IMG/VR virus record: IMGVR_UViG_3300032770_000001
Coordinates: 124,001 to 188,000 of that record
Direction: 5' to 3' (one strand)
Length of the DNA stretch: 64,000 nt
In this document: one piece after another, positions 3,862 through 36,908 of the stretch
Layout: the number at the start of each line of letters is the position of its first letter
Numbering within the stretch: the first letter of the stretch is position 1
Position numbers and translations under genes: made by a program
Notes under the pieces: model-generated
Told to the model about the DNA's origin: nothing
Database searches by the model: none
What the model saw: only the letters and a program-made list of their open reading frames with translations

Positions 3862-4432
3862 ACGTAAATATCGTACAACCTTGCTGAATGGAACGGCTCC
3901 CGAAGGGGATAAGGCGTGGTGCGTACACTGCGATGAATATGCGTATGATGAAGAGGGAAAGGCCATCGGCCCTGATCCCTGCAAACCACACACCTGCGAC
4001 TGCGAATGCCACACTAAGGCTCGTAAGCCGAAGTGCCTGTGTGCCGTAGTGGAAATTGAGAATCCGTGGGATTCCCCGGTCGGCTGCTGCATGGATTGCG
4101 ACTGCTTCTGCCACGTCGCCGAACAGAAGGAAGCAGACCGTACTAAGAAAAAACGAGACGCTCTGTGGAAAGCGGAGTTGAAGCGGCAGGAGGACGAGCG
4201 GTTCAAGAAAGAAGGCGTGCACGACTGGGAGAAGAAAGTGTTGGAATACCTCCTGCTCGATCCTAGCAGTTTGGATTTTAAGTACCGTTCATTCTTGGAG
4301 GCGTTGGCTTTTTCTGACAAAGCCGCCGCAGCCGGGAAGAAAGAGACGGGCACCGCGTTTATGAAACGAATGGCGACCACGCCGTGGGGATCGGTCTTCA
4401 TCGATGTCCACCGATTTCAGCCCGTAAAATAA
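3854..4432 (+). CDS. Cys-rich hypothetical protein
   Basis: 192-aa ORF with CxxC/CxCxCH clusters; ends just before a promoter. Confidence 0.7.
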   Translation: MSKRKYRTTLLNGTAPEGDKAWCVHCDEYAYDEEGKAIGPDPCKPHTCDCECHTKARKPKCLCAVVEIENPWDSPVGCCMDCDCFCHVAEQKEADRTKKKRDALWKAELKRQEDERFKKEGVHDWEKKVLEYLLLDPSSLDFKYRSFLEALAFSDKAAAAGKKETGTAFMKRMATTPWGSVFIDVHRFQPVK

Positions 4433-5267: not shown

Positions 5268-5345
5268 GCGCAGGTGATGGGAACTGGCATACCTAGTCGA
5301 ATGAGATTCGGCTGTTTGTGGGTTCGAAGCCCACTCTGCGCACCA
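5268..5345 (+). tRNA. tRNA-Leu(GAG), short variable loop
   Basis: GCGCAGG/TCTGCGC acceptor stem, GTCGA-ATGAGAT-TCGGC, 5-nt variable loop, TTCGAAG T-loop, ACCA. Confidence 0.8.
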
Positions 5346-5391
5346 AGATATGGTAGACTCCGTGGTATTAGTTAATCATGAGGTCTGCCAC

Positions 5392-6180
5392 ATGAAGCTG
5401 AAGTACACGAAGGAAATGTTAGAGCCGTTGGTGCGAGAGAGCACCAGTTTTCGGCAGGTCATTGACAAGCTGGGTATACGTCAGGGCGGCGGCACTCAGG
5501 CTAACCTTGTTCGTCGCATTAAGGCGCATGGATTAGACACGTCTCATTTCCTCGGACAGGCGCACGGTCGCGGTAAGCTTCGCGTTCGTTTAATTGCTTC
5601 GGAGGTTCTCGTCAATAATCGGACAGGTCGCAGAGAACACACCGATGTGCTTAGACGGGTGATGTTGGAATCGGGCGTCCCGTACCACTGTGAGCTATGT
5701 CCTAATGATGGAACTTGGCAGGGCCGACCGATAGTTTTGGAGATCGATCACCGGAACGGAAACAATCTGGATAATCGATTGGAGAATCTTCGATTCCTCT
5801 GTCCGAACTGCCATAGCCAACAGGTGACGGATGGTTCGAAAAATATTGCACTTCGTGAATTTGAGAAAAAACAAGGCTGGGTTTTGAAGGATAGTACGAC
5901 GCCAACGGAGTTCATGGCTAAGCACTACGAGGAATTGGCTAATAAAGTGCGCGAGCGATATCCGGATATGGCGTCAATGTTGGAGAGAATTGCGGATAAA
6001 GTCCGCTCCTACCTCAGCATGAACAAGGCAACGGTTCGCGTGTTCATTCGTGCTGACGGACAAGGCGCTACTTTTTATGTGCAGGGCGATGAGGAATGTG
6101 ATGCGATTGCAAAAGTCCGCGATCTGGCTCGCGACCTCACGAAAGAAGCGCAGGAGGGTACAAGATTTCGTTTAGTTTGA
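5392..6180 (+). CDS. HNH endonuclease with a C-terminal extension
   Basis: CELC...LEIDHRNGNNLDNRLENLRFLCPNCH; N-terminus of the kind seen in tRNA-linked phage HNH genes. Confidence 0.9.
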   Translation: MKLKYTKEMLEPLVRESTSFRQVIDKLGIRQGGGTQANLVRRIKAHGLDTSHFLGQAHGRGKLRVRLIASEVLVNNRTGRREHTDVLRRVMLESGVPYHCELCPNDGTWQGRPIVLEIDHRNGNNLDNRLENLRFLCPNCHSQQVTDGSKNIALREFEKKQGWVLKDSTTPTEFMAKHYEELANKVRERYPDMASMLERIADKVRSYLSMNKATVRVFIRADGQGATFYVQGDEECDAIAKVRDLARDLTKEAQEGTRFRLV

Positions 6181-6229
6181 TGTGCTTTGTTGTATCAACG
6201 TCAAGTTTTGATGTAACAAAGCACATCGG

Positions 6230-6315
6230 GCCGGAATGGTGGAATTGGCAGACACACTCCGTTCAGCGCGGAGCGGTTAACAGCCATGGGGGTTCAAGTC
6301 CCCCTTCCGGCACCA
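6230..6315 (+). tRNA. tRNA-Leu(CAG)
   Basis: GCCGGAA/TTCCGGC acceptor stem, CTCCG-TTCAGCG-CGGAG, long variable arm, ACCA. Confidence 0.9.
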
Positions 6316-6319
6316 AGTT

Positions 6320-6405
6320 CGGGTCGCGGCGAATGCGAGGGATGTTTTCCGGAAAACGCTACCTCGGTCACGCCGATAAAAACCGCGTGATGAGCGACCT
6401 GACCA
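6320..6405 (+). ncRNA. tRNA-like RNA with an 8-bp terminal stem and an ACCA end
   Basis: CGGGTCGC/GCGACCTG plus ACCA; internal helices GAGG/CCTC, GTTTT/AAAAC, TCACGC/GCGTGA; no T-loop consensus. Confidence 0.55.
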
Positions 6406-6409
6406 TTTT

Positions 6410-6495
6410 GCGGCTGTGGTGGAATGGCAGACACGCAGCGTTGAGGGCGCTGTTCTCGAAAGGGAGTGAAGGTTCAAGTCCTTTCAGCCGCACCA
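6410..6495 (+). tRNA. tRNA-Leu(GAG), canonical
   Basis: GCGGCTG/CAGCCGC acceptor stem, CAGCG-TTGAGGG-CGCTG, long variable arm, ACCA. Confidence 0.95.
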
Positions 6496-6540
6496 GTTTT
6501 AGTACGTTTCCGATTTTCGGAAAATCGGATTTGACAAAAT

Positions 6541-6619
6541 GCGTGGGTGAGGCAATTAGGCAGACCTCTTACGCTTAGAACGTAAGGTTTTGGGGGTTCG
6601 ATTCCCCCTCCACGCACCA
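6541..6619 (+). tRNA. tRNA-Leu(TAG), short variable loop
   Basis: GCGTGGG/TCCACGC acceptor stem, TTACG-CTTAGAA-CGTAA, 6-nt variable region, ACCA. Confidence 0.9.
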
Positions 6620-6624
6620 GTTTC

Positions 6625-6702
6625 GCCGGGATGATGCAATTTGGCAGACATCTTCGCCTCAAAATCGAAGTTCTGCGGGTTCGAGTCCCGCTCCCGGCAC
6701 CA
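6625..6702 (+). tRNA. tRNA-Leu(CAA), short variable loop
   Basis: GCCGGGA/TCCCGGC acceptor stem, loop CTCAAAA, 5-nt variable loop, ACCA. Confidence 0.9.
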
Positions 6703-6765
6703 AACCTCTCAAAACAAAGCACTTAAACCTAGCTAAAAACGACTCCCCGCAGGTAGAATAAGGGT

Positions 6766-7002: not shown

Positions 7003-7182
7003 ATGTCGATCCCCGTACCGATCACCAAAGAAGAAGTCAAGAAGATCACCAGAGAACTCAAGAAGCCGCAGGACGTGATCTGTCTTGACGTGGACTCCCA
7101 CCTTAAGACCCTGCTCGTTGGGCAGAGCATGTTGCTGCTCGGCAAGACCGTCAAGGCAAAAATCGTCAAGGGTTACAAATGA
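7003..7182 (+). CDS. Small hypothetical protein (59 aa)
   Basis: GAGG RBS; MSIPVPITKEEVKK...; ATGA overlap with the next gene. Confidence 0.6.
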   Translation: MSIPVPITKEEVKKITRELKKPQDVICLDVDSHLKTLLVGQSMLLLGKTVKAKIVKGYK

Positions 7183-7499
7183 AGCGCGGCCTGTGGGAGA
7201 TTTTGGTTCCGGTCGTCAATAACCGGGGCAAGAAAATCCCTGTCAAATTTCATCAGGGTTGGGACGCCAAGGTGCGTGCCATCAGCGGCGGCTTGACTAT
7301 CCGTAAGCCGGAGAAGGGTCAGTGGGTTCACCCGGAATCGAAGTCCCTGTTCGCCGAGAAAATGATCCCGGTGAAATTCATGGGCACCCGTGACGAGGCG
7401 GACCAGATCGCACAGATGACGCTGGAGTATTACGACCAGCAGGCGGTCATGTGCTACAAGATCGCGGAAGAAGTCATCATGAAGGTTCGTTCCAGCTAG
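7179..7499 (+). CDS. Hypothetical protein
   Basis: 106-aa ORF, translationally coupled. Confidence 0.7.
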   Translation: MKRGLWEILVPVVNNRGKKIPVKFHQGWDAKVRAISGGLTIRKPEKGQWVHPESKSLFAEKMIPVKFMGTRDEADQIAQMTLEYYDQQAVMCYKIAEEVIMKVRSS

Positions 7500-7511
7500 G
7501 TATTATCTAGT

Positions 7512-7793
7512 GTGGATGACCGCGACACGTTCGACCGCAAGTGCGTAGAGTTGCACATGGCGGTCTATTTTCACATGCAGGCGATTCAGTTCGCCGACGA
7601 GCGCAACGCCGAGCCGGGGGAGATGCGTGAACTCCTGAAACGGCGAACCGATCTGGTTCAGGAAGCGTTGGATTACGTCTACGAGCATTGGGAGTATCTG
7701 GACGAGCCGACCAAGAAAGATTGGGAAGCTGCGGCTGCGGAGTTCCCACTAGCGAGAGAGAATGAAAACAGCGAAGCTACCGACGAAGATTGA
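7512..7793 (+). CDS. Helical hypothetical protein
   Basis: 93-aa ORF; GGTATTA 6 nt upstream of the start. Confidence 0.65.
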   Translation: MDDRDTFDRKCVELHMAVYFHMQAIQFADERNAEPGEMRELLKRRTDLVQEALDYVYEHWEYLDEPTKKDWEAAAAEFPLARENENSEATDED

Positions 7794-8409
7794 CAGTTTC
7801 CGGGGCGTATACCGCTTCCTGTCGAACTTCTACGAGAACTGCCCGGTGAAGCTGTGGGTGAGCACCAAGGGCAAGGTCTTTGCGAATTACGATGGGCTCT
7901 ACGGAATTGTCGAGCACATCAACTCGTTCAATCATCTGCCGGACGATCATCCGGATCGCGATTTTCTGTACTGGATTGAGACTTACGACAACGTCGAGAA
8001 TGCGTATCAGGCGGCGAAGTCCCTCGACATAAACGTTCGTGAGAAGTTCCGTGTTCGCGGCCTGCGTCCGTGGGATGCGAAGAAGCTTGGCGGCACAGTG
8101 AAACTACGTCCTGATTGGGATACAGGCACCGGGACTATGCCGCCGTTTAAGATTGTGGTCATGCTCGGTTTGCTGATGCAGAAATTTGAGCCGACCATGC
8201 TACGGCGTCGTCTGCTTTCAACGATGACGGCTGAATTGATTGAGGGCAACAACTGGCACGACACGTATTGGGGCGTCTGCGACGGGAATTGCAACGAAGG
8301 TCCGCATGAACCGTTCGGCACCAACCATCTCGGCAGGCTGCTGATGATCGTGCGAGGGTATCACGGAGGTTTGTACGATGGCACGAGTATTCTTACAGCG
8401 CGTCAGTGA
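7762..8409 (+). CDS. NADAR (YbiA-like) family protein
   Basis: FLSNFY, ENAYQAAK, LRPDW, LIEGNNWHDTYWG, NHLGRLLM. Confidence 0.9.
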   Translation: MKTAKLPTKIDSFRGVYRFLSNFYENCPVKLWVSTKGKVFANYDGLYGIVEHINSFNHLPDDHPDRDFLYWIETYDNVENAYQAAKSLDINVREKFRVRGLRPWDAKKLGGTVKLRPDWDTGTGTMPPFKIVVMLGLLMQKFEPTMLRRRLLSTMTAELIEGNNWHDTYWGVCDGNCNEGPHEPFGTNHLGRLLMIVRGYHGGLYDGTSILTARQ

Positions 8410-8870: not shown

Positions 8871-8945
8871 CAGGGCGTGGTGTAGTGGTTGCATCCCGCA
8901 TTTGGAATGCGGTGGTCGCTGGTTCGACCCCAGCCGCCCTGACCA
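8871..8945 (+). tRNA. tRNA-Pro(TGG), divergent
   Basis: CAGGGCG/CGCCCTG acceptor stem, CCGCA-TTTGGAA-TGCGG, ACCA. Confidence 0.9.
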
Positions 8946-8950
8946 ATCAT

Positions 8951-9027
8951 CAGGGTAGAGTTGGGTCTGGTTCAATCCCCGCCTCGGACGCGGGTGTTCG
9001 CGGGTTCAAATCCCGCTGCCCTGACCA
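8951..9027 (+). tRNA. tRNA-Pro(CGG), divergent
   Basis: CAGGGTA/TGCCCTG acceptor stem, CCCGC-CTCGGAC-GCGGG, ACCA. Confidence 0.85.
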
Positions 9028-9043
9028 AATTTCTGAGGTCAGT

Positions 9044-9202
9044 ATGTTTGAGGCGAGTGAGTGGCGGCATAAAGGTTGTGGTGGTCAGCCCTGTGAGTTT
9101 GAGCCGGGGCGGTGGGCTTGCACGGGGTGCAAGCGTGCATGGTACGCTGGAGCGAACTTTTTCACGTACCTCGCAAACGTGGTCTTTGAAAAGAGAGTCT
9201 GA
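9044..9202 (+). CDS. Small Cys-containing protein (52 aa)
   Basis: MFEASEWRHKGCGGQPC...CTGC; short, support is weak. Confidence 0.4.
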   Translation: MFEASEWRHKGCGGQPCEFEPGRWACTGCKRAWYAGANFFTYLANVVFEKRV

Positions 9203-9350
9203 GGTGGAGCGACAGAGGTGGGCAAGTGGCATCGCTGCCTGTGTCGTTGTACGAAGCGTGGGGGCTTGCTCCTGCGTTAGTCCACAGTACAGCCTGCCCA
9301 ACCGATGCCGGATGGCTGCCGAGTCGCCCATAAATTTCGTTTCGAGGAAT

Positions 9351-9427
9351 CAGGATGTAGCTTAGCTTGGTAAAGCGCGTGCTTGGGGTGCACGAGACCG
9401 GGAGTTCAAATCTCCCCATCCTGACCA
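9351..9427 (+). tRNA. tRNA-Pro(GGG)
   Basis: CAGGATG/CATCCTG acceptor stem, CGTGC-TTGGGGT-GCACG, ACCA. Confidence 0.95.
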
Positions 9428-9459
9428 AAAATTTGAGAAGTAACAAGACCGAGGAAGGT

Positions 9460-9516
9460 ACATGGATGCTGGGGCGGTGTGCGCACACGTGAGTTCAATG
9501 CTCACTCCATGTACCA
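9460..9516 (+). ncRNA. 57-nt mini-tRNA (acceptor stem, T-arm and CCA; no D-arm or anticodon loop)
   Basis: ACATGGA/TCCATGT plus ACCA; GTGAG-TTCAATG-CTCAC T-arm. Confidence 0.55.
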
Positions 9517-9586
9517 TCGGATATTCCGACACGCTAAGATTGTACGGTGCGTGACATCGAGTGGAAGTCTCGAAACAGGTTTTTGA

Positions 9587-9658
9587 TGCGGGGTAGTGTA
9601 GTAGCGCACGGAAGTCTCATAAACTTCCAGACCAGTGCGACTCTGGCGACCGCAACCA
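9587..9658 (+). tRNA. Degenerate tRNA(CAT), Met or Ile2
   Basis: GAAGT-CTCATAA-ACTTC anticodon arm, short D-arm, T-loop TGCGACT, mismatch in the acceptor stem, ACCA. Confidence 0.7.
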
Positions 9659-9661
9659 TTT

Positions 9662-9737
9662 CGGTGTGTAGCTCAATGGCTAGAGCACTCGGTTTGGGGC
9701 CGAGGGGTTGGGGGTTCGAGTCCCTCCACGCCGACCA
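9662..9737 (+). tRNA. tRNA-Pro(TGG), canonical
   Basis: CGGTGTG/CACGCCG acceptor stem, CTCGG-TTTGGGG-CCGAG, ACCA. Confidence 0.95.
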
Positions 9738-9752
9738 TTTTGGAGAACGAAC

Positions 9753-10413
9753 ATGATTGTTGAAATTCGAGCAGCGGAAGGTGGAGATGACGCAAAGCTT
9801 CTCGTGTCCGACCAACTCACGATCTATGCGAGATTGGCGGCTCGGAGGGGTCTTTGAGTTTGAGATAACCGAAGAACGTCCCGGCATAGCGGTGTTTCAG
9901 GTGACGGGACAGGGAGCCCCGGCGTTGTTTGCAAATGAGAGCGGGGGGCACCGTTGGCAGCGAGTTCCGCCGACCGAACGATACGGACGACGGCAGACAT
10001 CGACAATCACTGTCGCAGTTTTCGAGGAGCCGAAGGTCGAAGAGATCAACATTCGTGCTCAGGATTTAGAGTGGGATACGTTCCGGAGCCGTGGTAAGGG
10101 CGGACAGAACGTTAACAAGGTCGAGACGGCTGTTCGCGTGACGCACAAGCCGAGTGGCTTGGTCGTGCGTTGTGAGAATGGCCGTAGTCAGTGGCATAAT
10201 AAGCGAACCGCTTTGCAGATTCTTGCGGCACGGTTGGAAGCGCGAGATCGAGAGCAGAGACAAAGCGTAGTGGTTGCAGATCGTCGGTCGCAGATCGGCA
10301 CAGGGCAGCGAGGCGACAAACGTCGTACAGCAAACGAGCGACAGGATCAAGTCACGGATCATGTCACCGGGCAGAAATGGCGCTATACTGATTACGTGAA
10401 GGGGAACTGGTAA
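9753..10413 (+). CDS. Class I release factor homolog (RF1-like PxT, GGQ, no N-terminal domain 1), expressed through a +1 frameshift at CTT-TGA 9852-9857
   Basis: ORF0 MIVEIRAAEGGDDAKLL...RRGL* (9753-9857); the +1 frame continues with RVPPTE, GGQNVNKVETAVR, RSQIG; GGAG RBS at 9742. Confidence 0.9.
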
Positions 10414-11024
10414 TGGAACAGTATCCGAGTATCGACGGTAGCAGCAAAGCACCCATAGGGGTTCCGTGCATCGCTTTTTATAAGTACGACGGCTCTAACC
10501 TTCGATGGGAGTGGAACCCCAAGAAGGGCTGGTTCAAGTTCGGTACGCGGACGCAGTTGTTCGGTAAGGATGATCCGTTGTGGGGCAAGGCGGTGCCGAT
10601 TTTCATGAACCAACTGGCGGATGAGATCGTGTACCGGGTCAAGCACGTGGAGCGGGGCTGTCAGCGGATCACGGCGTTCACGGAGTTTTTCGGATCGGGG
10701 ACATTCGCCGGACAGCACCCGGAGATGACTGGCGGCAGCGAGGAGAAGGAATTGAGGCTCTTCGATGTCTACCTGTTCAAGCGGGGCTTGATGAAACCTC
10801 GGCAGTTCGTGAAGAGTTTTGGCGATCTACCGCAGGCGGCTCAGGTGATCTATGATGGAAACCTGAACCGACAGTTCATCGAAGACGTTCGGATGGGGCT
10901 GTACCCAGTGAATGAGGGGGTGGTTGCGAAGGGTGACGATTTCATGGTGAAGATCAAGACCTACGCATACCTGAAGCGGCTGAACGAAGTTTACGGAACT
11001 GCATATCGGAACTATTGGGAGTAA
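10413..11024 (+). CDS. ATP-dependent RNA ligase-like nucleotidyltransferase
   Basis: KYDGSN, EFFG, FDV, EGVV, KIKT motifs; TAATG overlap with the release factor gene. Confidence 0.75.
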   Translation: MEQYPSIDGSSKAPIGVPCIAFYKYDGSNLRWEWNPKKGWFKFGTRTQLFGKDDPLWGKAVPIFMNQLADEIVYRVKHVERGCQRITAFTEFFGSGTFAGQHPEMTGGSEEKELRLFDVYLFKRGLMKPRQFVKSFGDLPQAAQVIYDGNLNRQFIEDVRMGLYPVNEGVVAKGDDFMVKIKTYAYLKRLNEVYGTAYRNYWE

Positions 11025-11100
11025 TTTTGAAGGCGATTTTTCAGTTTGTTCGCAGGATTTTTCGCCGGGGCGAGTATCGTCCTATAGGGTGTTGGTGAGG

Positions 11101-11177
11101 CGGGGATTAGCTCAGCTTGGTAGAGCGCACGCTTCGGGAGCGTGAGGTCGCAGGTTCGAATCCTGCATCCCCGACCA
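11101..11177 (+). tRNA. tRNA-Pro(CGG), canonical
   Basis: CGGGGAT/ATCCCCG acceptor stem, CACGC-TTCGGGA-GCGTG, ACCA. Confidence 0.97.
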
Positions 11178-23641: not shown

Positions 23642-26239
23642 ATGGCAGAGAAACCACTTCCAAAGCGTGAGCGGGGCACCCACACCAAAATCGGTAGCAC
23701 GGCAATTAAGCGTCCGGTTTCCAAGGGACCGGACGGTAAGGAATACGCCTCGGCTGGACGCTACACCCACATGAACAAAAAGGGTGAGGTCGTGGAAGAC
23801 TCGATCTCGGCGCAGCTTCGCGCCATCAAAGCTCAGGCTCAGTCCGGTGTAGTGAGTAACAACCCGAACGCCGGATGGGGCATGTACGAGGCAGCTAAGA
23901 TCGCTGCCGGATTGTTCAACGACGGCGGACTGGGCACCGCCGACATCGCCGATTCCAATAACATCGGCTACTACAGCTATGAATTCCCGGTTGACGCTCT
24001 CGAACTCCCGGCGTCCCGTGCAGAAGAACTCCGTTTCTACCGTCTGGCATACGACCGCGATCCAATCGTTGGTCGCGCTATCGACTTGCACACGGAACTC
24101 CCGGTCAGCAAGATGACCATGGAGAAGCCGAAGTCTTCCTCTGAAGAGTACGCCGACTACGTGTTCGACGACTTCCAACGCATGGTCAATCGTACCCGCC
24201 TGTTCCAAGTCATCATCGATGCTGCCCGTGAATACTGGTGCATCGGCGAGACTTTCATGTTCATTGAAGACCCCGAAGAGATTGAGCCGTGCAAGGAAGC
24301 CGCCAAGACCCTCGATAAGGAAGGTAAGGGCGGCGGTAGCGGCACTGAGCAGGGCATGGAATCAGCGTGGCATCCGCCGATGGGCGGCTCAGCCGACTCG
24401 ATTCTGGACTACCTCCAGCCCGAAAAGCGTTCCTCATGGATCAAGAAACGTGCCTCCGTGCTGGATGAAATCAAGAAGGCGGGTATCGCTTTTGATTTCT
24501 ACGAAAATCCGGATGCGGTCGATTCTCGCATTAAGGAAAAGCGTGCTGATCTCAACAAGCTGACCCGGAAGCTCGCTAAGGAAGTGGGTGTTCCAGCGAA
24601 GACTCTTGCCAAGCTCATTATCGACGCCGACAGCGGCGACAAGAAGACCGCGAAAGCGGCAAAGATCAAGATGGCAAAGCTCATCGGTCGCACATTAGGT
24701 GACGATGAGCATCCGCTTCAAGTTACGGCGGATATGACCAAGGTTGCGCAACCTCCTGCCGCTCCTCCTGCGGAGCCTGCGGCTGGTGGTGCGGGTGCCG
24801 GGGCTCCTCCGGGGGCTGATGTCCCTGTGGATGCTCCCGGTGCTGAGGGTGGTGAAGGTGCTCCTCTCGGTGAGGGCGGTTTGGGCGACATCGAGGGTAT
24901 GGGCGGTGGTGGGGCTCCTCCGATGGGTGGAGGCGGGGGCGGTGGTCCGATTGGTACGCCCGGTGGGGCGGTGCCGGATGTCAAGGGCGCTATAGCCATG
25001 GGTGCGACCATCAGTGCTCAGCGTGAGTTGATGGAACTCAAGCACCTGTTGAAACTCCTCGAAAAGCAGAAAGAACTGCTCAAGGAATTGAAAGAGACTC
25101 GTGAAGAGAAGCGCGAGGAGATGGAGTTGTTCTCGCACATTACGAACAAGGACTACGAGGGTCCGGATCGTGTGCAGATTCTTCCGCCTGAACAGATTGA
25201 GATCACCAACGAAGGCACGCTCACTGACGGCCCGACGATCTATTACAAACCGCCTGAGGCACAGAAACAGGCGTACCTCGAAGACCCTGAAGTTCCGAAT
25301 CAGGTCAAGGACGTGATTCAGAGCGAGGGCAAGATTCCGCTCAACCAAGACCCGTTCTCCGGTTCTTACGTGATTCACTTTGCGCGTAAGAAGTCCGGCT
25401 ACGAACTGCATGGTCGCTCGATCCTGCAACGCTGTATTCGCACGATCATCTACCGTGAAAAGCTCCGTCAGGTGCAGTCCACGTTGGCGTCTCGCAACAT
25501 GACGCCGAAGCGTTTGATCGTGGCTCCTGACATTCCGGCATCCGAAGTCATGGCTCTCCGTGCACACATCGACGAAGCCATCGCCGATCCGGACTACTCA
25601 GTGGTTGTCAATTATGAGTGCCGCTGGGAAGAAATTGGTTCGGAAGGCCGTCTGCTCACGCTTGACGCCGAATGGAACCACACCAACTCGGACTTGGCAA
25701 TCGGTCTCGGTCTGTCGCCGGAAATTCTGATCGGCGAAGGCATGTACTCCGGCAACCGCATTCAGTTGGAAATCATGAACGTGTCGTACCTCCAGTTCCG
25801 CGACCTTCTCACGTATGTGATTGAAGAACAAATCTTCAAGCCCTACGCCATGAAGAAGGGCTTCTACGAAATGGACAAGTACGGTCGCCCACGTTGGATT
25901 TACCCGAAGGTCACGTTCAGCCGCATGGCTCTCCGCGACTCCGGTGACCTGTACGACATGCTCTTCAATTTGTACTCGAAGGGCTCGCTGCCAGTCGAAG
26001 TTATTTACGAGTTCCTGAACCTCGATCCTGAGGATTGCGAACGTAAGCTGGAAGAGTCGCTGTTCACCGTTAAGGACGCGAAGTTCAGTCAGTTGCTCGA
26101 CAACATCTACAACTCGATGGGCGAGTGGCTCATGGCGAACACCGATCTGGGTAAGCGCATCACCGAGGGTCTGCAACTGAACGAGGTTGACGCCGATCTG
26201 CAAGACGAAGGACCTGAGGGTTCAGGCGAAGGTATGTAA
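23642..26239 (+). CDS. Portal protein with a large low-complexity insert
   Basis: DPIVGRAIDLH..., HFARK...HGRSILQRC, LAIGLGLSPEIL: the pattern of large-phage portal proteins. Confidence 0.75.
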   Translation: MAEKPLPKRERGTHTKIGSTAIKRPVSKGPDGKEYASAGRYTHMNKKGEVVEDSISAQLRAIKAQAQSGVVSNNPNAGWGMYEAAKIAAGLFNDGGLGTADIADSNNIGYYSYEFPVDALELPASRAEELRFYRLAYDRDPIVGRAIDLHTELPVSKMTMEKPKSSSEEYADYVFDDFQRMVNRTRLFQVIIDAAREYWCIGETFMFIEDPEEIEPCKEAAKTLDKEGKGGGSGTEQGMESAWHPPMGGSADSILDYLQPEKRSSWIKKRASVLDEIKKAGIAFDFYENPDAVDSRIKEKRADLNKLTRKLAKEVGVPAKTLAKLIIDADSGDKKTAKAAKIKMAKLIGRTLGDDEHPLQVTADMTKVAQPPAAPPAEPAAGGAGAGAPPGADVPVDAPGAEGGEGAPLGEGGLGDIEGMGGGGAPPMGGGGGGGPIGTPGGAVPDVKGAIAMGATISAQRELMELKHLLKLLEKQKELLKELKETREEKREEMELFSHITNKDYEGPDRVQILPPEQIEITNEGTLTDGPTIYYKPPEAQKQAYLEDPEVPNQVKDVIQSEGKIPLNQDPFSGSYVIHFARKKSGYELHGRSILQRCIRTIIYREKLRQVQSTLASRNMTPKRLIVAPDIPASEVMALRAHIDEAIADPDYSVVVNYECRWEEIGSEGRLLTLDAEWNHTNSDLAIGLGLSPEILIGEGMYSGNRIQLEIMNVSYLQFRDLLTYVIEEQIFKPYAMKKGFYEMDKYGRPRWIYPKVTFSRMALRDSGDLYDMLFNLYSKGSLPVEVIYEFLNLDPEDCERKLEESLFTVKDAKFSQLLDNIYNSMGEWLMANTDLGKRITEGLQLNEVDADLQDEGPEGSGEGM

Positions 26240-35738: not shown

Positions 35739-36908
35739 ATGGGCGTTGATACTCACAAAGTAGAAGTCGTTCCCGTAGTGCTGGAACCACATCCAGACCC
35801 GGAGACGACCGCACTGTCCGTGGTGAAGATTTACAACTTCACCGTGGTCGTTCGCACTGAAGACTGGAAGGGAGTGGAGCGAGCCGCGTATGTGCAGCCC
35901 GACTCTATCCTTCCCGACAAGCCGGAGTTCCGTTTCCTGAAGATTACCGGGAACATCAAGCGTGAACTTGATGCTCTTGAGGGACTCACCGGGCCGGAGG
36001 CCGACGCACAGCGTGCGGCTCTTGAAGCCAAGATCGATATGAACACCAAGTATCTGTGCATTACGGTGCGCAAGCTTCGTGGTGTCATGTCGATGGGGAT
36101 GTTGCTGCCGCTGCCTCCGGGATATGAGAACGCGGAGTACGGCACCGATCTGGCTGATGTGCTCGGCATCACGCATTACGAGCCGCCAACTGAAGAGGAG
36201 CAGGTCAAGTCCCGCCGTCACGCAGGTGACGATGTCGGACCGCCTCCTCCGTCCTGCATCTACGCTCCGTCTTATGACGTGGAGTCTGCGTACAAGTACG
36301 CTTCTCTGTTCGAGCCGGGTGAGATGGTCTACGTATCGGAGAAAATCGACGGGCAGAACGCTCGTTTCGTGGCAACCGATGCTGACAACGAATGGCGTCG
36401 TGAAGAGACTCCGGGTGGACAGGTAAGCTCTGTTCGCGATATCACTCTCTACGCTGGTAGCCGCAACGAGTGGAAAAAGAAGGAAGGCGGCTCCAACTGG
36501 TGGAGAGTGCAGGAGCAGAACGAGTGGATTCCACGCTGGTGCTACGACAATCAGGATCGCGTCATGTACGGCGAGACCTTTGGTTGGGTAGCCAAATTGA
36601 AGTACGGCGCTAAGCAGGGACAGTTGTTCTTCCGCGCCTTTGACGTGTTGGACGGAACGGAATACTGGGACGCGGAGAAGTTCATCGCTGAGTTCCACGA
36701 ATCCCTCCGTGCCCCTTCACTCGGCATCATGCCGTTCGATTGGGAAAAGCTCGTCAAACTGGCGGACGGTCCGTCCCTTATTCCGGGGGCGAACAATATT
36801 AGGGAAGGGATTGTAATTAAACCTGTTAAAGAGCGTCGTCATTACAAACTCGGACGTGTTTTTGTCAAACTGGTGAGCAATGCCTATCTCGAACAGTCCA
36901 GCCGCTAA
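35739..36908 (+). CDS. ATP-dependent RNA ligase (DRB0094-like, N-terminal OB domain)
   Basis: EKIDG, GETFG, FDV, REGIV, KLVSNAYL; N-terminal PHP..L.V OB-like segment. Confidence 0.88.
   Translation: MGVDTHKVEVVPVVLEPHPDPETTALSVVKIYNFTVVVRTEDWKGVERAAYVQPDSILPDKPEFRFLKITGNIKRELDALEGLTGPEADAQRAALEAKIDMNTKYLCITVRKLRGVMSMGMLLPLPPGYENAEYGTDLADVLGITHYEPPTEEEQVKSRRHAGDDVGPPPPSCIYAPSYDVESAYKYASLFEPGEMVYVSEKIDGQNARFVATDADNEWRREETPGGQVSSVRDITLYAGSRNEWKKKEGGSNWWRVQEQNEWIPRWCYDNQDRVMYGETFGWVAKLKYGAKQGQLFFRAFDVLDGTEYWDAEKFIAEFHESLRAPSLGIMPFDWEKLVKLADGPSLIPGANNIREGIVIKPVKERRHYKLGRVFVKLVSNAYLEQSSR

What the first reader, a model, noticed from the sequence alone, without database searches (positions are those of the whole stretch)
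6320..6405. Non-cloverleaf tRNA-like RNA with an ACCA end inside the Leu cluster
It has an 8-bp terminal stem plus A-CCA and the same spacing as the neighbouring tRNAs, but the interior (GAGG/CCTC arm capped by the palindrome GTTTTCCGGAAAAC; TCACGC/GCGTGA arm with an A-rich loop) has no T-loop or anticodon loop. It could be a decoy for tRNA-targeting nucleases or sensors, or a CCA-tagged ncRNA.
Basis: partly seen in the sequence, partly recalled or inferred. Interest (0 to 1): 0.6.

Follow-up and report, generated by a model that had tools for sequence, protein, structure and literature searches.

The report
Anticodon-less tRNA mimic in phage tRNA array
A 455-kb wetland phage carries, inside its leucine-tRNA gene array, a conserved 86-base RNA gene that has a tRNA's acceptor stem and ACCA tail but no anticodon, so it looks like a non-decoding tRNA mimic, one of several such RNAs in this phage group.

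Summary
Window 6320-6405 folds into an 8-bp terminal stem followed by A-CCA and two internal hairpins. It lies 4 nt after tRNA-Leu(CAG) and 4 nt before tRNA-Leu(GAG). ARAGORN does not call it, and no Rfam family matches even at E<=10.

It is more than chance. A diverged copy (87% identity) lies in another phage contig (L036). Eight of its 11 differences form four compensatory pairs, one per helix. Every junction and tetraloop base and the ACCA are unchanged. It is as conserved as the flanking tRNAs (74-89%) and more than neighbouring coding DNA (70-77%). Three conserved G-U pairs point to a + strand RNA.

The acceptor end (C1-G72, A73) is the type of this phage's five tRNA-Pro genes, not of its Leu tRNAs.

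The same genome and two relatives also encode cloverleaf tRNAs whose anticodon loop is replaced by a tetraloop. They also share a conserved 50-nt stem+ACCA RNA. The candidate therefore looks like the most derived member of a set of anticodon-less tRNA mimics.

Processing, charging and function are untested, because no RNA data exist. My preferred reading is a decoy or competitor for tRNA-binding host factors. The closest precedent is the T4 RNAs C and D.

The parts
6180..6229 (+). Conserved long hairpin upstream of the Leu genes. In this genome it directly precedes tRNA-Leu(CAG). In L036 its homolog (746-801) directly precedes the candidate's homolog.
   Evidence: 72% identity to L036; also present in L018 and L021
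6230..6315 (+). tRNA-Leu(CAG), class II, with encoded CCA. It is the upstream neighbour.
6316..6319 (+). AGUU spacer. This is the commonest 3' trailer after CCA in this genome, and it puts U at -1 of the candidate.
   Evidence: AGTT follows 17 of 59 CCA-ending tRNAs; U at -1 in 33 of 59
6320..6327 (+). P1 5' strand (CGGGUCGC), the acceptor-like stem. C1 pairs with G at 6401.
   Evidence: pair 7:76 changes G-C to A-U in L036
6328..6335 (+). 8-nt single-stranded junction GGCGAAUG in the place of a D arm. It is invariant between the two lineages.
6336..6366 (+). Hairpin 1. It has a 5-bp base, an internal loop GA/CUA (possible G.A plus A-U with a bulged C), a 6-bp apical stem and a CCGG tetraloop. 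It sits where an anticodon arm would be but has no 7-nt loop.
   Evidence: compensatory changes at 19:45 (A-U to G-C) and 28:35 (U-A to C-G); one mismatch at 26:37 in L036
6367..6391 (+). Hairpin 2. It has a 7-bp stem and an 11-nt A-rich loop. It sits where a T arm would be but has no T-loop motif.
   Evidence: compensatory change at 49:71 (U-A to C-G); the only unpaired changes lie in its loop (A57C and a 1-nt deletion)
6392..6393 (+). GA junction, invariant.
6394..6401 (+). P1 3' strand (GCGACCUG).
6402..6405 (+). Discriminator A plus an encoded CCA. It is single-stranded and invariant.
   Evidence: 59 of 61 ARAGORN tRNAs of the genome also encode CCA
6406..6409 (+). UUUU spacer before the next tRNA.
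6410..6495 (+). tRNA-Leu(GAG), class II. The downstream neighbour is this same tRNA in both lineages.

Best explanation
Window 6320-6405 is a gene for a small structured RNA that mimics a tRNA without being able to decode.

**Shown**
- It is a three-way junction. An 8-bp acceptor-type stem (C1-G72, discriminator A73, encoded CCA) closes an 8-nt linker. A long bulged helix follows, capped by a CCGG tetraloop, and sits where the D and anticodon arms would be. A 7-bp hairpin sits where the T arm would be.
- All four helices are kept by compensatory substitutions in a diverged phage.
- The unpaired junction bases, the tetraloop and the ACCA are invariant.

**Inferred**
- It is transcribed with the tRNA-Leu genes.
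- RNase P cuts after U(-1) to free the 5' end. This would be helped by the RCCA tail, as for the phage's C1-G72 tRNA-Pro genes.
- The 3' end is trimmed back to CCA like its neighbours, giving a stable 86-nt RNA with a free tRNA-like 3' end.

**Most likely role (inference, not tested)**
- It competes as a decoy for proteins that grip the tRNA body or the acceptor/CCA end. Examples are host tRNA-directed anti-phage nucleases, CCA-end-modifying toxins, and processing or repair enzymes.
- With no anticodon loop, it can neither be cut by anticodon nucleases nor enter decoding.

It is the most derived member of a set of anticodon-less tRNA mimics in this phage clade.
For: **Structure and position**
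- Searches show the structure and its place in the array.
- ARAGORN and Rfam (E<=10) find nothing there.

**Homolog L036:807-891** (97 bits, E about 2e-20)
- It has 11 differences. Eight form 4 compensatory pairs, one in each helix.
- Partner columns slid by 1-3 give 0 compensatory pairs.
- Random placement of 10 substitutions gives 4 compensatory pairs in 0 of 300,000 trials.

**Conservation**
- Element 87% identical, flanking tRNA-Leu genes 74-89%, neighbouring ORFs 70-77%, spacer 54%.
- A 1-nt indel excludes coding.

**Strand**
- Three conserved G-U pairs.
- The forward strand folds to -32.3 and the reverse complement to -26.8 kcal/mol.

**tRNA-like ends**
- The flanks match the genome's tRNA flanks, and the C1-G72/A73 end is shared with all five tRNA-Pro genes.

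**A wider set**
- Cloverleaf tRNAs with GCAA, GAAA, CUCG or CUAG tetraloops instead of anticodon loops, still ending in NCCA, occur in G000, G004 and G002. The G000 example scores 55 bits on the Rfam tRNA model.
- A 50-nt stem+ACCA three-way junction is conserved in G000, G002 and G004 (two copies). Its hairpin sequences are swapped but the helices and GNRA loops are kept.

**tRNA-end repair context**
- The phage encodes a CCA-adding-enzyme family gene and an RNA ligase.
Against: - Only two independent lineages carry it.
- The models built from it find nothing significant in 10 related IMG/VR records or in 9 further related contigs. Pattern scans of the viral, metagenome and genome collections also find nothing. 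The covariation sample is therefore minimal and the element is lineage-restricted.
- There is no expression or end-mapping data.
- The MFE z-score is only -1.8.
- Without a T loop and D arm, the RNase P S-domain contacts and the L-shape are assumptions.
- In L036 it is not flush with tRNAs.
- Nothing links it to any particular defence system, and no binding partner is identified.
Confidence: 0.45

Rival explanations
1. It is a cis-acting processing element, a tRNA-like 'punctuation' signal in the manner of plant-mitochondrial t-elements. Its only job would be to give RNase P and the 3' trimming enzymes a handle for cutting the polycistronic tRNA transcript. The excised piece itself would have no function.
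For: - It lies within a tRNA operon with tRNA-like flanks and an RCCA tail, which favours bacterial RNase P (RCCA dependence as in PMC12710915, abstract seen).
- In L036 it lies between a conserved hairpin and a spacer rather than flush with tRNAs.
Against: - Neighbouring tRNAs already supply RNase P sites. Many tRNAs in this genome are 1-7 nt apart with no such element.
- All 23 unpaired bases outside the hairpin-2 loop, the bulged internal loop and the CCGG loop are invariant. Both internal hairpins are kept by compensation. That is more constraint than a cleavage handle needs.
Confidence: 0.15
2. It is a non-decoding aminoacyl carrier. The RNA would be charged through its acceptor end, which has the tRNA-Pro-type C1-G72/A73, and would deliver the amino acid to a non-ribosomal process.
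For: - The acceptor stem, A73 and CCA are intact and invariant.
- The end matches the phage's tRNA-Pro genes.
- G72 and A73 are recognised by bacterial ProRS (established knowledge; PMC2377447 listed).
Against: - Bacterial ProRS also depends strongly on anticodon G35/G36 (established knowledge), which are absent here.
- No aminoacyl-tRNA-dependent transferase gene was seen next to it. The neighbours are an HNH endonuclease and proteins of unknown function.
- There is no D/T elbow.
Confidence: 0.1
3. It is a trans-acting regulatory or protein-sponging RNA whose tRNA-like end serves only for maturation and stability. Its active surface would be the conserved junction, the bulged helix or the palindromic CCGG loop, and its target would be unrelated to tRNA biology.
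For: - The junction GGCGAAUG, the GA/CUA internal loop and the CCGG loop are invariant.
- T4 RNAs C and D set a precedent for tRNA-operon RNAs of unknown role (PMC3014915).
Against: - No target or partner is identifiable.
- Co-occurrence with several other anticodon-less tRNA mimics points to tRNA mimicry itself as the selected property.
Confidence: 0.15
4. It is a decaying tRNA pseudogene or a chance structure in a spacer, with no function.
For: - The MFE z-score is only -1.8.
- It is absent from most relatives.
- Relatives carry degenerate tRNA-Leu-like remnants without CCA in the same arrays.
Against: - There are four compensatory pairs, one per helix, with P below about 3e-6 under random substitution.
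- Identity equals that of functional tRNAs, while adjacent spacers are unalignable.
Confidence: 0.05
5. It is a DNA-level element, such as a protein-binding palindrome, a homing-endonuclease target or a recombination site, rather than an RNA.
For: - It contains the palindrome GTTTTCCGGAAAAC, and the next spacer has a related palindrome at 6496-6540.
- An HNH endonuclease gene sits 140 nt upstream.
- The tRNA order differs between the two lineages.
Against: - Three conserved G-U pairs would be C-A mismatches on the other strand, and the reverse strand folds 5.5 kcal/mol worse.
- Long-range pairing of the two ends 66 nt apart, plus a conserved single-stranded ACCA, has no DNA rationale.
Confidence: 0.05

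Closest known systems
Bacteriophage T4 RNA C (species 1) and RNA D (species 2), the small stable RNAs of the T4 tRNA gene cluster
   Same: - They are non-tRNA small RNAs encoded inside a phage tRNA operon, co-oriented with the tRNAs and next to a homing-endonuclease gene (segB in T4, HNH here).
- RNA C has paired ends and a tRNA-like 3' part.
- Their biological role is still unknown (PMC3014915).
   Different: - There is no sequence or model similarity. Model R2 finds nothing at rnaC or rnaD.
- T4 RNA C is 139 nt and keeps a canonical T arm (GGGUUCGAAUCCC). Neither T4 RNA encodes CCA in the annotated gene.
- The candidate has no T loop and does encode ACCA.
Canonical and unusual-cloverleaf tRNAs (Rfam RF00005; 8/4 and 9/3 acceptor/T variants of Mukai et al., PMC5389517)
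   Same: - An acceptor stem with discriminator and CCA.
- An 8-bp acceptor stem has precedents (tRNA-Sec, tRNA-His and the 8/4 tRNAs, some of them in phages; abstract).
- C1-G72/A73 as in bacterial-type tRNA-Pro.
   Different: - It has no D arm, no 7-nt anticodon loop and no T loop.
- It is a three-way junction, not a four-way one.
- ARAGORN and the tRNA covariance model do not detect it.
Anticodon-less tRNA mimics of the same phage clade: tetraloop-capped cloverleaf tRNAs and the 50-nt stem+ACCA RNA found here
   Same: - They lie in tRNA arrays with an NCCA tail, a tRNA-type acceptor stem, and a stable tetraloop where the anticodon would be.
- The 50-nt RNA shares the same junction layout: stem, 4-8 nt linker, hairpin, hairpin with no spacer between them, closing strand, then ACCA.
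   Different: - They are not demonstrably homologous. The model built from the candidate scores them at E of about 0.4-1.
- The cloverleaf versions still score as tRNA (55 bits), while the candidate does not.
Other tRNA mimics: the tmRNA tRNA-like domain, bacterial Y RNAs (YrlA) with Ro60, plant-virus 3' tRNA-like structures, plant mitochondrial t-elements, and the Bacillus cereus pseudo-tRNA 'tRNA-Other'
   Same: They use an acceptor-arm-like helix to engage tRNA enzymes (RNase P, the CCA-adding enzyme, aaRSs) without ordinary decoding.
   Different: - No Rfam family of these kinds matches.
- The phage has no Ro60/TROVE gene, and its tmRNA gene is elsewhere.
- Those mimics keep a T-loop-like elbow, which this RNA lacks.

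Membership tests
tRNA (RF00005) | Acceptor stem of about 7 bp, discriminator base and a 3' CCA | tested here: met
   8-bp stem, A, and an encoded, unpaired CCA. It is conserved in L036.
tRNA (RF00005) | Cloverleaf with a D arm, an anticodon arm with a 7-nt loop (U33, anticodon), and a T arm with a T-psi-C loop | tested here: not met
   ARAGORN makes no call. The Rfam tRNA model gives no hit at E<=10 on 6100-6760. The arms end in a CCGG tetraloop and an 11-nt A-rich loop, and an 8-nt linker replaces the D arm.
tRNA (RF00005) | Aminoacylation and use in decoding | not testable with these tools
   This needs charging assays. With no anticodon, decoding is excluded on structural grounds.
Phage tRNA-operon stable RNAs (T4 RNA C / RNA D type) | Encoded within a phage tRNA gene cluster, on the same strand, and not a tRNA | tested here: met
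Phage tRNA-operon stable RNAs (T4 RNA C / RNA D type) | Sequence or structure homology to T4 rnaC or rnaD | tested here: not met
   Model R2 with filters off finds nothing at L047:1909-2172. The folds differ.
Phage tRNA-operon stable RNAs (T4 RNA C / RNA D type) | Excised from the tRNA precursor and accumulating as a stable RNA | not testable with these tools
   No RNA run holds the sequence. Contigs of other runs do not cover it.
Bacterial Y RNA / Ro60 RNP | A Ro60 (TROVE) partner and a Y-RNA model match | tested here: not met
   There is no PF05731 in the 455-kb genome, and the control genomes did ring. No Rfam hit.
Small self-cleaving ribozymes (hammerhead-like three-way junction) | Conserved unpaired CUGANGA and GAAA core strands | tested here: not met
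   The UGAUGA string at 6388-6393 is mostly the 3' strand of hairpin 2. Its A71 covaries with U49, changing to G and C in L036. No Rfam ribozyme hit.
Intrinsic terminator | A GC-rich hairpin directly followed by a U run | tested here: not met
   The scan flags 6324-6338 plus a T run. The G-to-A change at 6326 in L036 breaks that hairpin, yet it is compensated in the long-range stem P1.

The most novel reading that the evidence does not exclude
A clade of huge (220-460 kb) wetland phages encodes a whole repertoire of anticodon-less tRNA mimics in its tRNA arrays. The repertoire includes cloverleaf tRNAs with a tetraloop in place of the anticodon, 46-50-nt acceptor-stem+ACCA mini-RNAs, and this 86-nt RNA with a Pro-type acceptor end. 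Together they would form a previously undescribed class of RNA counter-defence. They would act as uncleavable decoys that soak up host anticodon nucleases, CCA-end-modifying toxins or tRNA sensors while the phage's own tRNAs keep translation going.
Probability: 0.25. Interest if true: 0.85.

Novelty: new variant of a known kind. Interest (0 to 1): 0.66.

Why it matters
Phage tRNA arrays are now read mainly as spare parts or decoys against tRNA-cleaving host defences. The non-tRNA RNAs that sit in such arrays (T4 RNAs C and D) have had no assigned function for about 50 years.

This case gives a conserved, covariation-supported RNA that keeps only the acceptor end of a tRNA. It is accompanied by tRNAs whose anticodon loop has been replaced by a tetraloop. 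That pattern suggests selection for tRNA shape without decoding.

If these RNAs are decoys or competitors, they would be a new type of RNA-based anti-defence. They would also make a simple tool for probing which host factors read the tRNA body and which read the anticodon. They also show that standard tRNA finders miss a layer of genes in huge-phage genomes.

Tried and rejected
**Known families**
- Rfam at gathering score and at E<=10, and ARAGORN: nothing at the element.

**A tRNA with a mini-intron in the anticodon loop**
- Removing the 14-nt palindrome leaves GAUGCUA, which has no U33 and no bulge-helix-bulge motif. Rejected by reading.

**Hammerhead-like core and local terminator hairpin**
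- Both are contradicted by covariation.

**Coding**
- The ORFs across the region (6177-6578 on +, 6277-6477 on -) are broken by the 1-nt indel in L036.

**Search for more homologs**
- Three exact or degenerate pattern scans of viral contigs found nothing.
- One scan of metagenome contigs found only the phage's own contig, and one of genome contigs found nothing.
- Models R1 and R2 over 10 related IMG/VR records and 20 or more loci gave nothing significant.
- The phage GenBank megablast found nothing.
- Single-protein locus searches with the NADAR and 106-aa proteins found nothing.
- The word search with the 75-aa neighbour returned only itself.

**A possible analogue**
- G010 (L028:2898-2973) lies between tRNA-Leu(TAG) and tRNA-Leu(CAA). 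It has a 7-bp stem, two hairpins and CACCA. It scores only E of about 1, so I do not claim it as a homolog.

**Expression**
- The look-up of sequencing runs gave only wetland DNA runs.
- Read laying (2,201 letters, within the operators' limit) showed no contig over 6336-6409. No support and no verdict follow from this.

**Other stem+CCA hits examined and set aside**
- Window 9460-9516: its ACCA is part of a longer covarying stem and is not conserved in L035.
- G000:26503-26569: a long hairpin followed by a U run at the end of an ORF, probably a terminator.
- Several further hits proved to be ordinary tRNAs missed by ARAGORN.

- No Ro60 partner was found.
- The big representative protein search, the structure prediction tools and the complex prediction tool were not needed.
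- No alternative genetic code was applied.

Full report
**Setting**

The window is bases 124001-188000 of a 455,708-bp virus record that is estimated complete. ARAGORN finds 61 tRNA genes and a tmRNA in it, arranged in six clusters sorted by amino acid. 59 of the 61 tRNAs encode their CCA. Sequencing runs that hold the DNA are wetland metagenomes. The genome also encodes a CCA-adding-enzyme family protein, an RNA ligase, a family A DNA polymerase, a release-factor-like protein and a NADAR protein.

**Observation**

- An 8-bp terminal stem joins 6320-6327 to 6394-6401, with one G-U pair. It is followed by A and CCA (6402-6405).
- Inside, an 8-nt linker GGCGAAUG comes first.
- Hairpin 1 (6336-6366) has a 5-bp base, a GA/CUA internal loop, a 6-bp stem and a CCGG loop.
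- Hairpin 2 (6367-6391) follows with no spacer. It has a 7-bp stem and an 11-nt A-rich loop.
- A GA junction closes the structure.
- The element starts 4 nt after the CCA of tRNA-Leu(CAG) and ends 4 nt before tRNA-Leu(GAG).
- ARAGORN does not call it. Rfam gives no match in 6100-6760 even at E<=10, while the four flanking tRNAs score 42-51 bits.

**Is it more than chance?**

Folding energy alone is not convincing: -32.3 kcal/mol, z = -1.8, and 7 of 200 shuffles fold as well.

A genome-wide scan for a 7-bp stem + N + CCA finds about 0.001 non-tRNA hits per position and strand. Hits next to tRNAs are enriched. With the 55-120 nt length window (6.8e-4 per position), six lie within 12 nt of a tRNA against about one expected. 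Most of these are tRNAs that ARAGORN missed.

**Comparative evidence (the decisive part)**

The 106-aa protein encoded 770 nt downstream has hundreds of relatives. The contig of its 88%-identical relative (L036, an ENA assembly) carries a copy of the element at 807-891. That copy scores 97 bits, E about 2e-20, against a model built from the candidate alone.

The copy differs at 11 of 86 positions.
- Eight differences form four compensatory double changes, one in each helix: 7:76 G-C to A-U, 19:45 A-U to G-C, 28:35 U-A to C-G, and 49:71 U-A to C-G.
- One difference makes a mismatch in the apical stem.
- Two differences lie in the hairpin-2 loop, one of them a 1-nt deletion.

RNAalifold recovers the same structure on its own. 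Sliding the partner columns by 1-3 gives no compensatory pair. Random placement of 10 substitutions gives three compensatory pairs in 8e-5 of trials and four in none of 300,000.

All 23 unpaired bases outside the hairpin-2 loop are unchanged. The element is 87% identical between the two phages. The five tRNA-Leu genes are 74-89% identical, the three downstream ORFs 70-77%, and the adjoining spacer is essentially unalignable at 54%.

Three G-U pairs are conserved, and the reverse complement folds 5.5 kcal/mol worse. The selected molecule is therefore a + strand RNA, co-oriented with the tRNAs. The 1-nt indel excludes a coding role. Identical copies occur in two other assemblies of the same phage (L038, L039).

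**Limits of the evidence**

The family is narrow.
- Models R1 and R2 find nothing significant in ten related IMG/VR records (DNA polymerase 46-70% identical). They also find nothing in nine further syntenic contigs.
- Pattern scans of the viral, metagenome and genome collections return only the phage's own contig.
- Relatives have syntenic Tyr-Leu arrays whose spacers hold other things. These include a conserved long hairpin (window 6180-6229), repeated TTTCAC/GTGAAA and TATTTACTG motifs, and degenerate Leu-like remnants.
- In L036 the element is not flush with tRNAs. It follows the conserved hairpin plus CAAGUU and is followed by a 64-nt spacer before tRNA-Leu(GAG).
- One possible analogue in G010 fills the gap between two Leu tRNAs with the same topology and a CACCA end. 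It scores only E of about 1.
- No RNA run holds the sequence, and contigs of other wetland runs do not cover it. Transcription and processing are therefore inferred, not shown.

**What kind of tRNA end is it?**

I listed the ends of all tRNAs in the genome. Its Leu tRNAs begin G1-C72. All five tRNA-Pro genes (window 8871-11177) and one tRNA-Ile begin C1 and end G72-A73-CCA. The candidate has the same end: CGGG...CCUG-ACCA. The upstream AGUU is the commonest trailer after CCA in this genome (17 of 59). U is the commonest -1 base (33 of 59). UUUU also occurs as a trailer. By its flanks, the element is laid out like a tRNA gene of this phage.

**A wider set in the same clade**

The suppressor-tRNA cluster of this genome (G000 25.8-26.5 kb, minus strand) interleaves tRNAs with further non-decoding elements.
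- A full cloverleaf tRNA scores 55 bits on the Rfam tRNA model. Its anticodon arm can fold as a 7-bp stem capped by a GCAA tetraloop.
- A 50-nt three-way junction has a 7-bp stem, two small hairpins and ACCA.
- A 46-nt element has D-like and T-like hairpins but no anticodon arm.
- A roughly 32-nt stem+ACCA element and a 94-nt stem+UCCA element are also present.

Relatives G004 and G002 carry cloverleaf tRNAs with GAAA, CUCG and CUAG tetraloops on 6-7-bp anticodon stems, all ending in NCCA.

The 50-nt RNA is conserved in G000, G002 and G004 (two copies). The terminal stem and ACCA are identical. The hairpin sequences are replaced, but the helices and GNRA loops are kept.

The candidate has the same junction layout as the 50-nt RNA and, like the others, a stable tetraloop where the anticodon would be. 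I therefore read it as the most derived member of a set of anticodon-less tRNA mimics. Homology among the members is not shown.

**Mechanism**

Shown: a conserved four-helix fold with a free ACCA.

Inferred from established tRNA biology:
- co-transcription with the Leu tRNAs;
- 5' cleavage by RNase P after U(-1), aided by the RCCA tail;
- 3' trimming to CCA;
- coaxial stacking of the acceptor stem on hairpin 2, with hairpin 1 (about 13 stacked layers if G22.A42 and A23-U41 form and C40 bulges) as the second limb. This would give a tRNA-sized, possibly L-shaped RNA.

Because it has no anticodon loop, it cannot decode and cannot be a substrate of anticodon nucleases.

My preferred function is a decoy or competitor for proteins that recognise the tRNA body or the acceptor/CCA end. 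This fits the current view of phage tRNAs as counter-measures to tRNA-targeting defences (for example PMC13096335). It also fits the phage's own CCA-adding and RNA-ligase genes. It remains inference.

Rivals are listed separately with their weights:
- a pure processing handle;
- a non-ribosomal aminoacyl carrier;
- a regulatory RNA that uses the tRNA end only for maturation;
- a pseudogene;
- a DNA-level site.

**Comparison with known systems**

The nearest precedent is the pair of small stable RNAs of the T4 tRNA cluster (rnaC and rnaD). They also sit beside a homing-endonuclease gene, and their roles are still unknown. They are not homologous. RNA C keeps a canonical T arm, which the candidate lacks.

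The candidate fails the defining cloverleaf features of tRNA. It has no Ro60 partner and matches no curated tRNA-like family. I found no paper describing natural phage tRNAs with tetraloop-capped anticodon stems, or acceptor-stem-only RNAs in phage arrays. The library is incomplete, so this is absence of evidence only.

**Verdict**

- It is a real, selected RNA gene: a non-decoding tRNA mimic.
- The decoy idea is plausible but untested.
- It is a new variant of a known kind.
- Confidence is about 0.85 that it is a functional structured RNA with a tRNA-type end, and about 0.3 for the decoy role.

Noticed in passing
G000:C1:25850-26440, minus strand (L002:9340-9960); G004 = L048:730-1660 minus strand; G002 = L049:1500-1890: The suppressor-tRNA(CUA) clusters interleave tRNAs with anticodon-less mimics. 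These are cloverleaf tRNAs whose anticodon stem is capped by a GCAA, GAAA, CUCG or CUAG tetraloop. There are also a conserved 50-nt three-way junction ending in ACCA, a 46-nt and a roughly 32-nt stem+ACCA element, a 94-nt stem+UCCA element, and in G004 a roughly 145-nt RNA with an acceptor stem, a T arm and ACCA.
   Followed up: partly
window 9460-9516 (with flanks 9445-9530): A structured element between two tRNA-Pro genes has a 41-nt core, including a T-arm-like GUGAG-UUCAAUG-CUCAC hairpin, that is 93-97% identical in G001, G004, G005 and L035. Its outer stem and a small palindromic hairpin covary. The ACCA here is part of a longer stem, so it belongs to a different kind of conserved RNA. 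It has no Rfam match at gathering score.
   Followed up: partly
window 5268-5345, 6541-6619, 6625-6702; G000:C1:271342-271419: Four tRNA-Leu genes (GAG, UAG, CAA, UAA) are only 78-79 nt long with a short variable loop, so they lack the long variable arm that defines bacterial tRNA-Leu. L036 shares this. More distant relatives have 84-88-nt class II versions of the UAG and CAA species.
   Followed up: partly
window 5350-6180: An HNH homing-endonuclease gene (PF13392/PF01844, phrog_10822) is inserted inside the tRNA-Leu array. L036 has a different small ORF at the corresponding place, and the tRNA order differs between the two phages.
   Followed up: partly
window 6180-6229: A long imperfect hairpin overlaps the HNH stop codon and directly precedes tRNA-Leu(CAG). 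It is conserved in L036 (746-801), L018 and L021, always at the head of Leu genes. It may be a processing or regulatory signal.
   Followed up: partly
window 6496-6540: The spacer after tRNA-Leu(GAG) holds the palindrome TCCGATTTTCGGAAAATCGGA, which echoes the TTTTCCGGAAAA palindrome at the tip of the candidate's hairpin 1.
   Followed up: no
window 9757-10413, with G000:C1:25852-26052: A class I release-factor-like ORF (PCRF and RF-1 domains) lies in the tRNA-Pro region, and two tRNAs with a CUA anticodon lie elsewhere in the genome. Together they hint at amber-codon reassignment or suppression in this phage. I did not test this, and all ORFs here were read with table 11.
   Followed up: no
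G000:C1:283747-283825, 290345-290428, 271425-271519, 93504-93580, 26144-26225 (minus strand): These tRNA-like genes were missed by ARAGORN. They are a tRNA-Trp(CCA) with a weak anticodon stem, a tRNA-Arg(UCU) with a long extra arm, a class II tRNA with a 9-nt anticodon loop (CCUUAUAAA), one with an odd T loop, and one with the loop UAUUUAA (A at position 33).
   Followed up: partly
window 35739-36908, 7762-8409; G000:C1:217352-217804: The phage encodes an RNA ligase (PF09414), a NADAR-domain protein and a CCA-adding-enzyme family protein. Together they look like a kit for RNA and tRNA repair and for reversing ADP-ribosylation.
   Followed up: no
window 7179-7499: A 106-aa protein of unknown function (phrog_3543) has 586 relatives in metagenomes. 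It keeps its place just downstream of the Tyr-Leu tRNA array in every related contig examined.
   Followed up: partly
L036:892-955, L056:3621-3702 and 3873-3950, L021:1586-1686, L020:2163-2232: Spacers of the Leu arrays in relatives carry repeated TTTCAC...GTGAAA and TATTTACTG...CAGTAAATA inverted-repeat motifs just upstream of tRNA genes. They may be phage promoters or operators. This phage lacks them next to the candidate.
   Followed up: no
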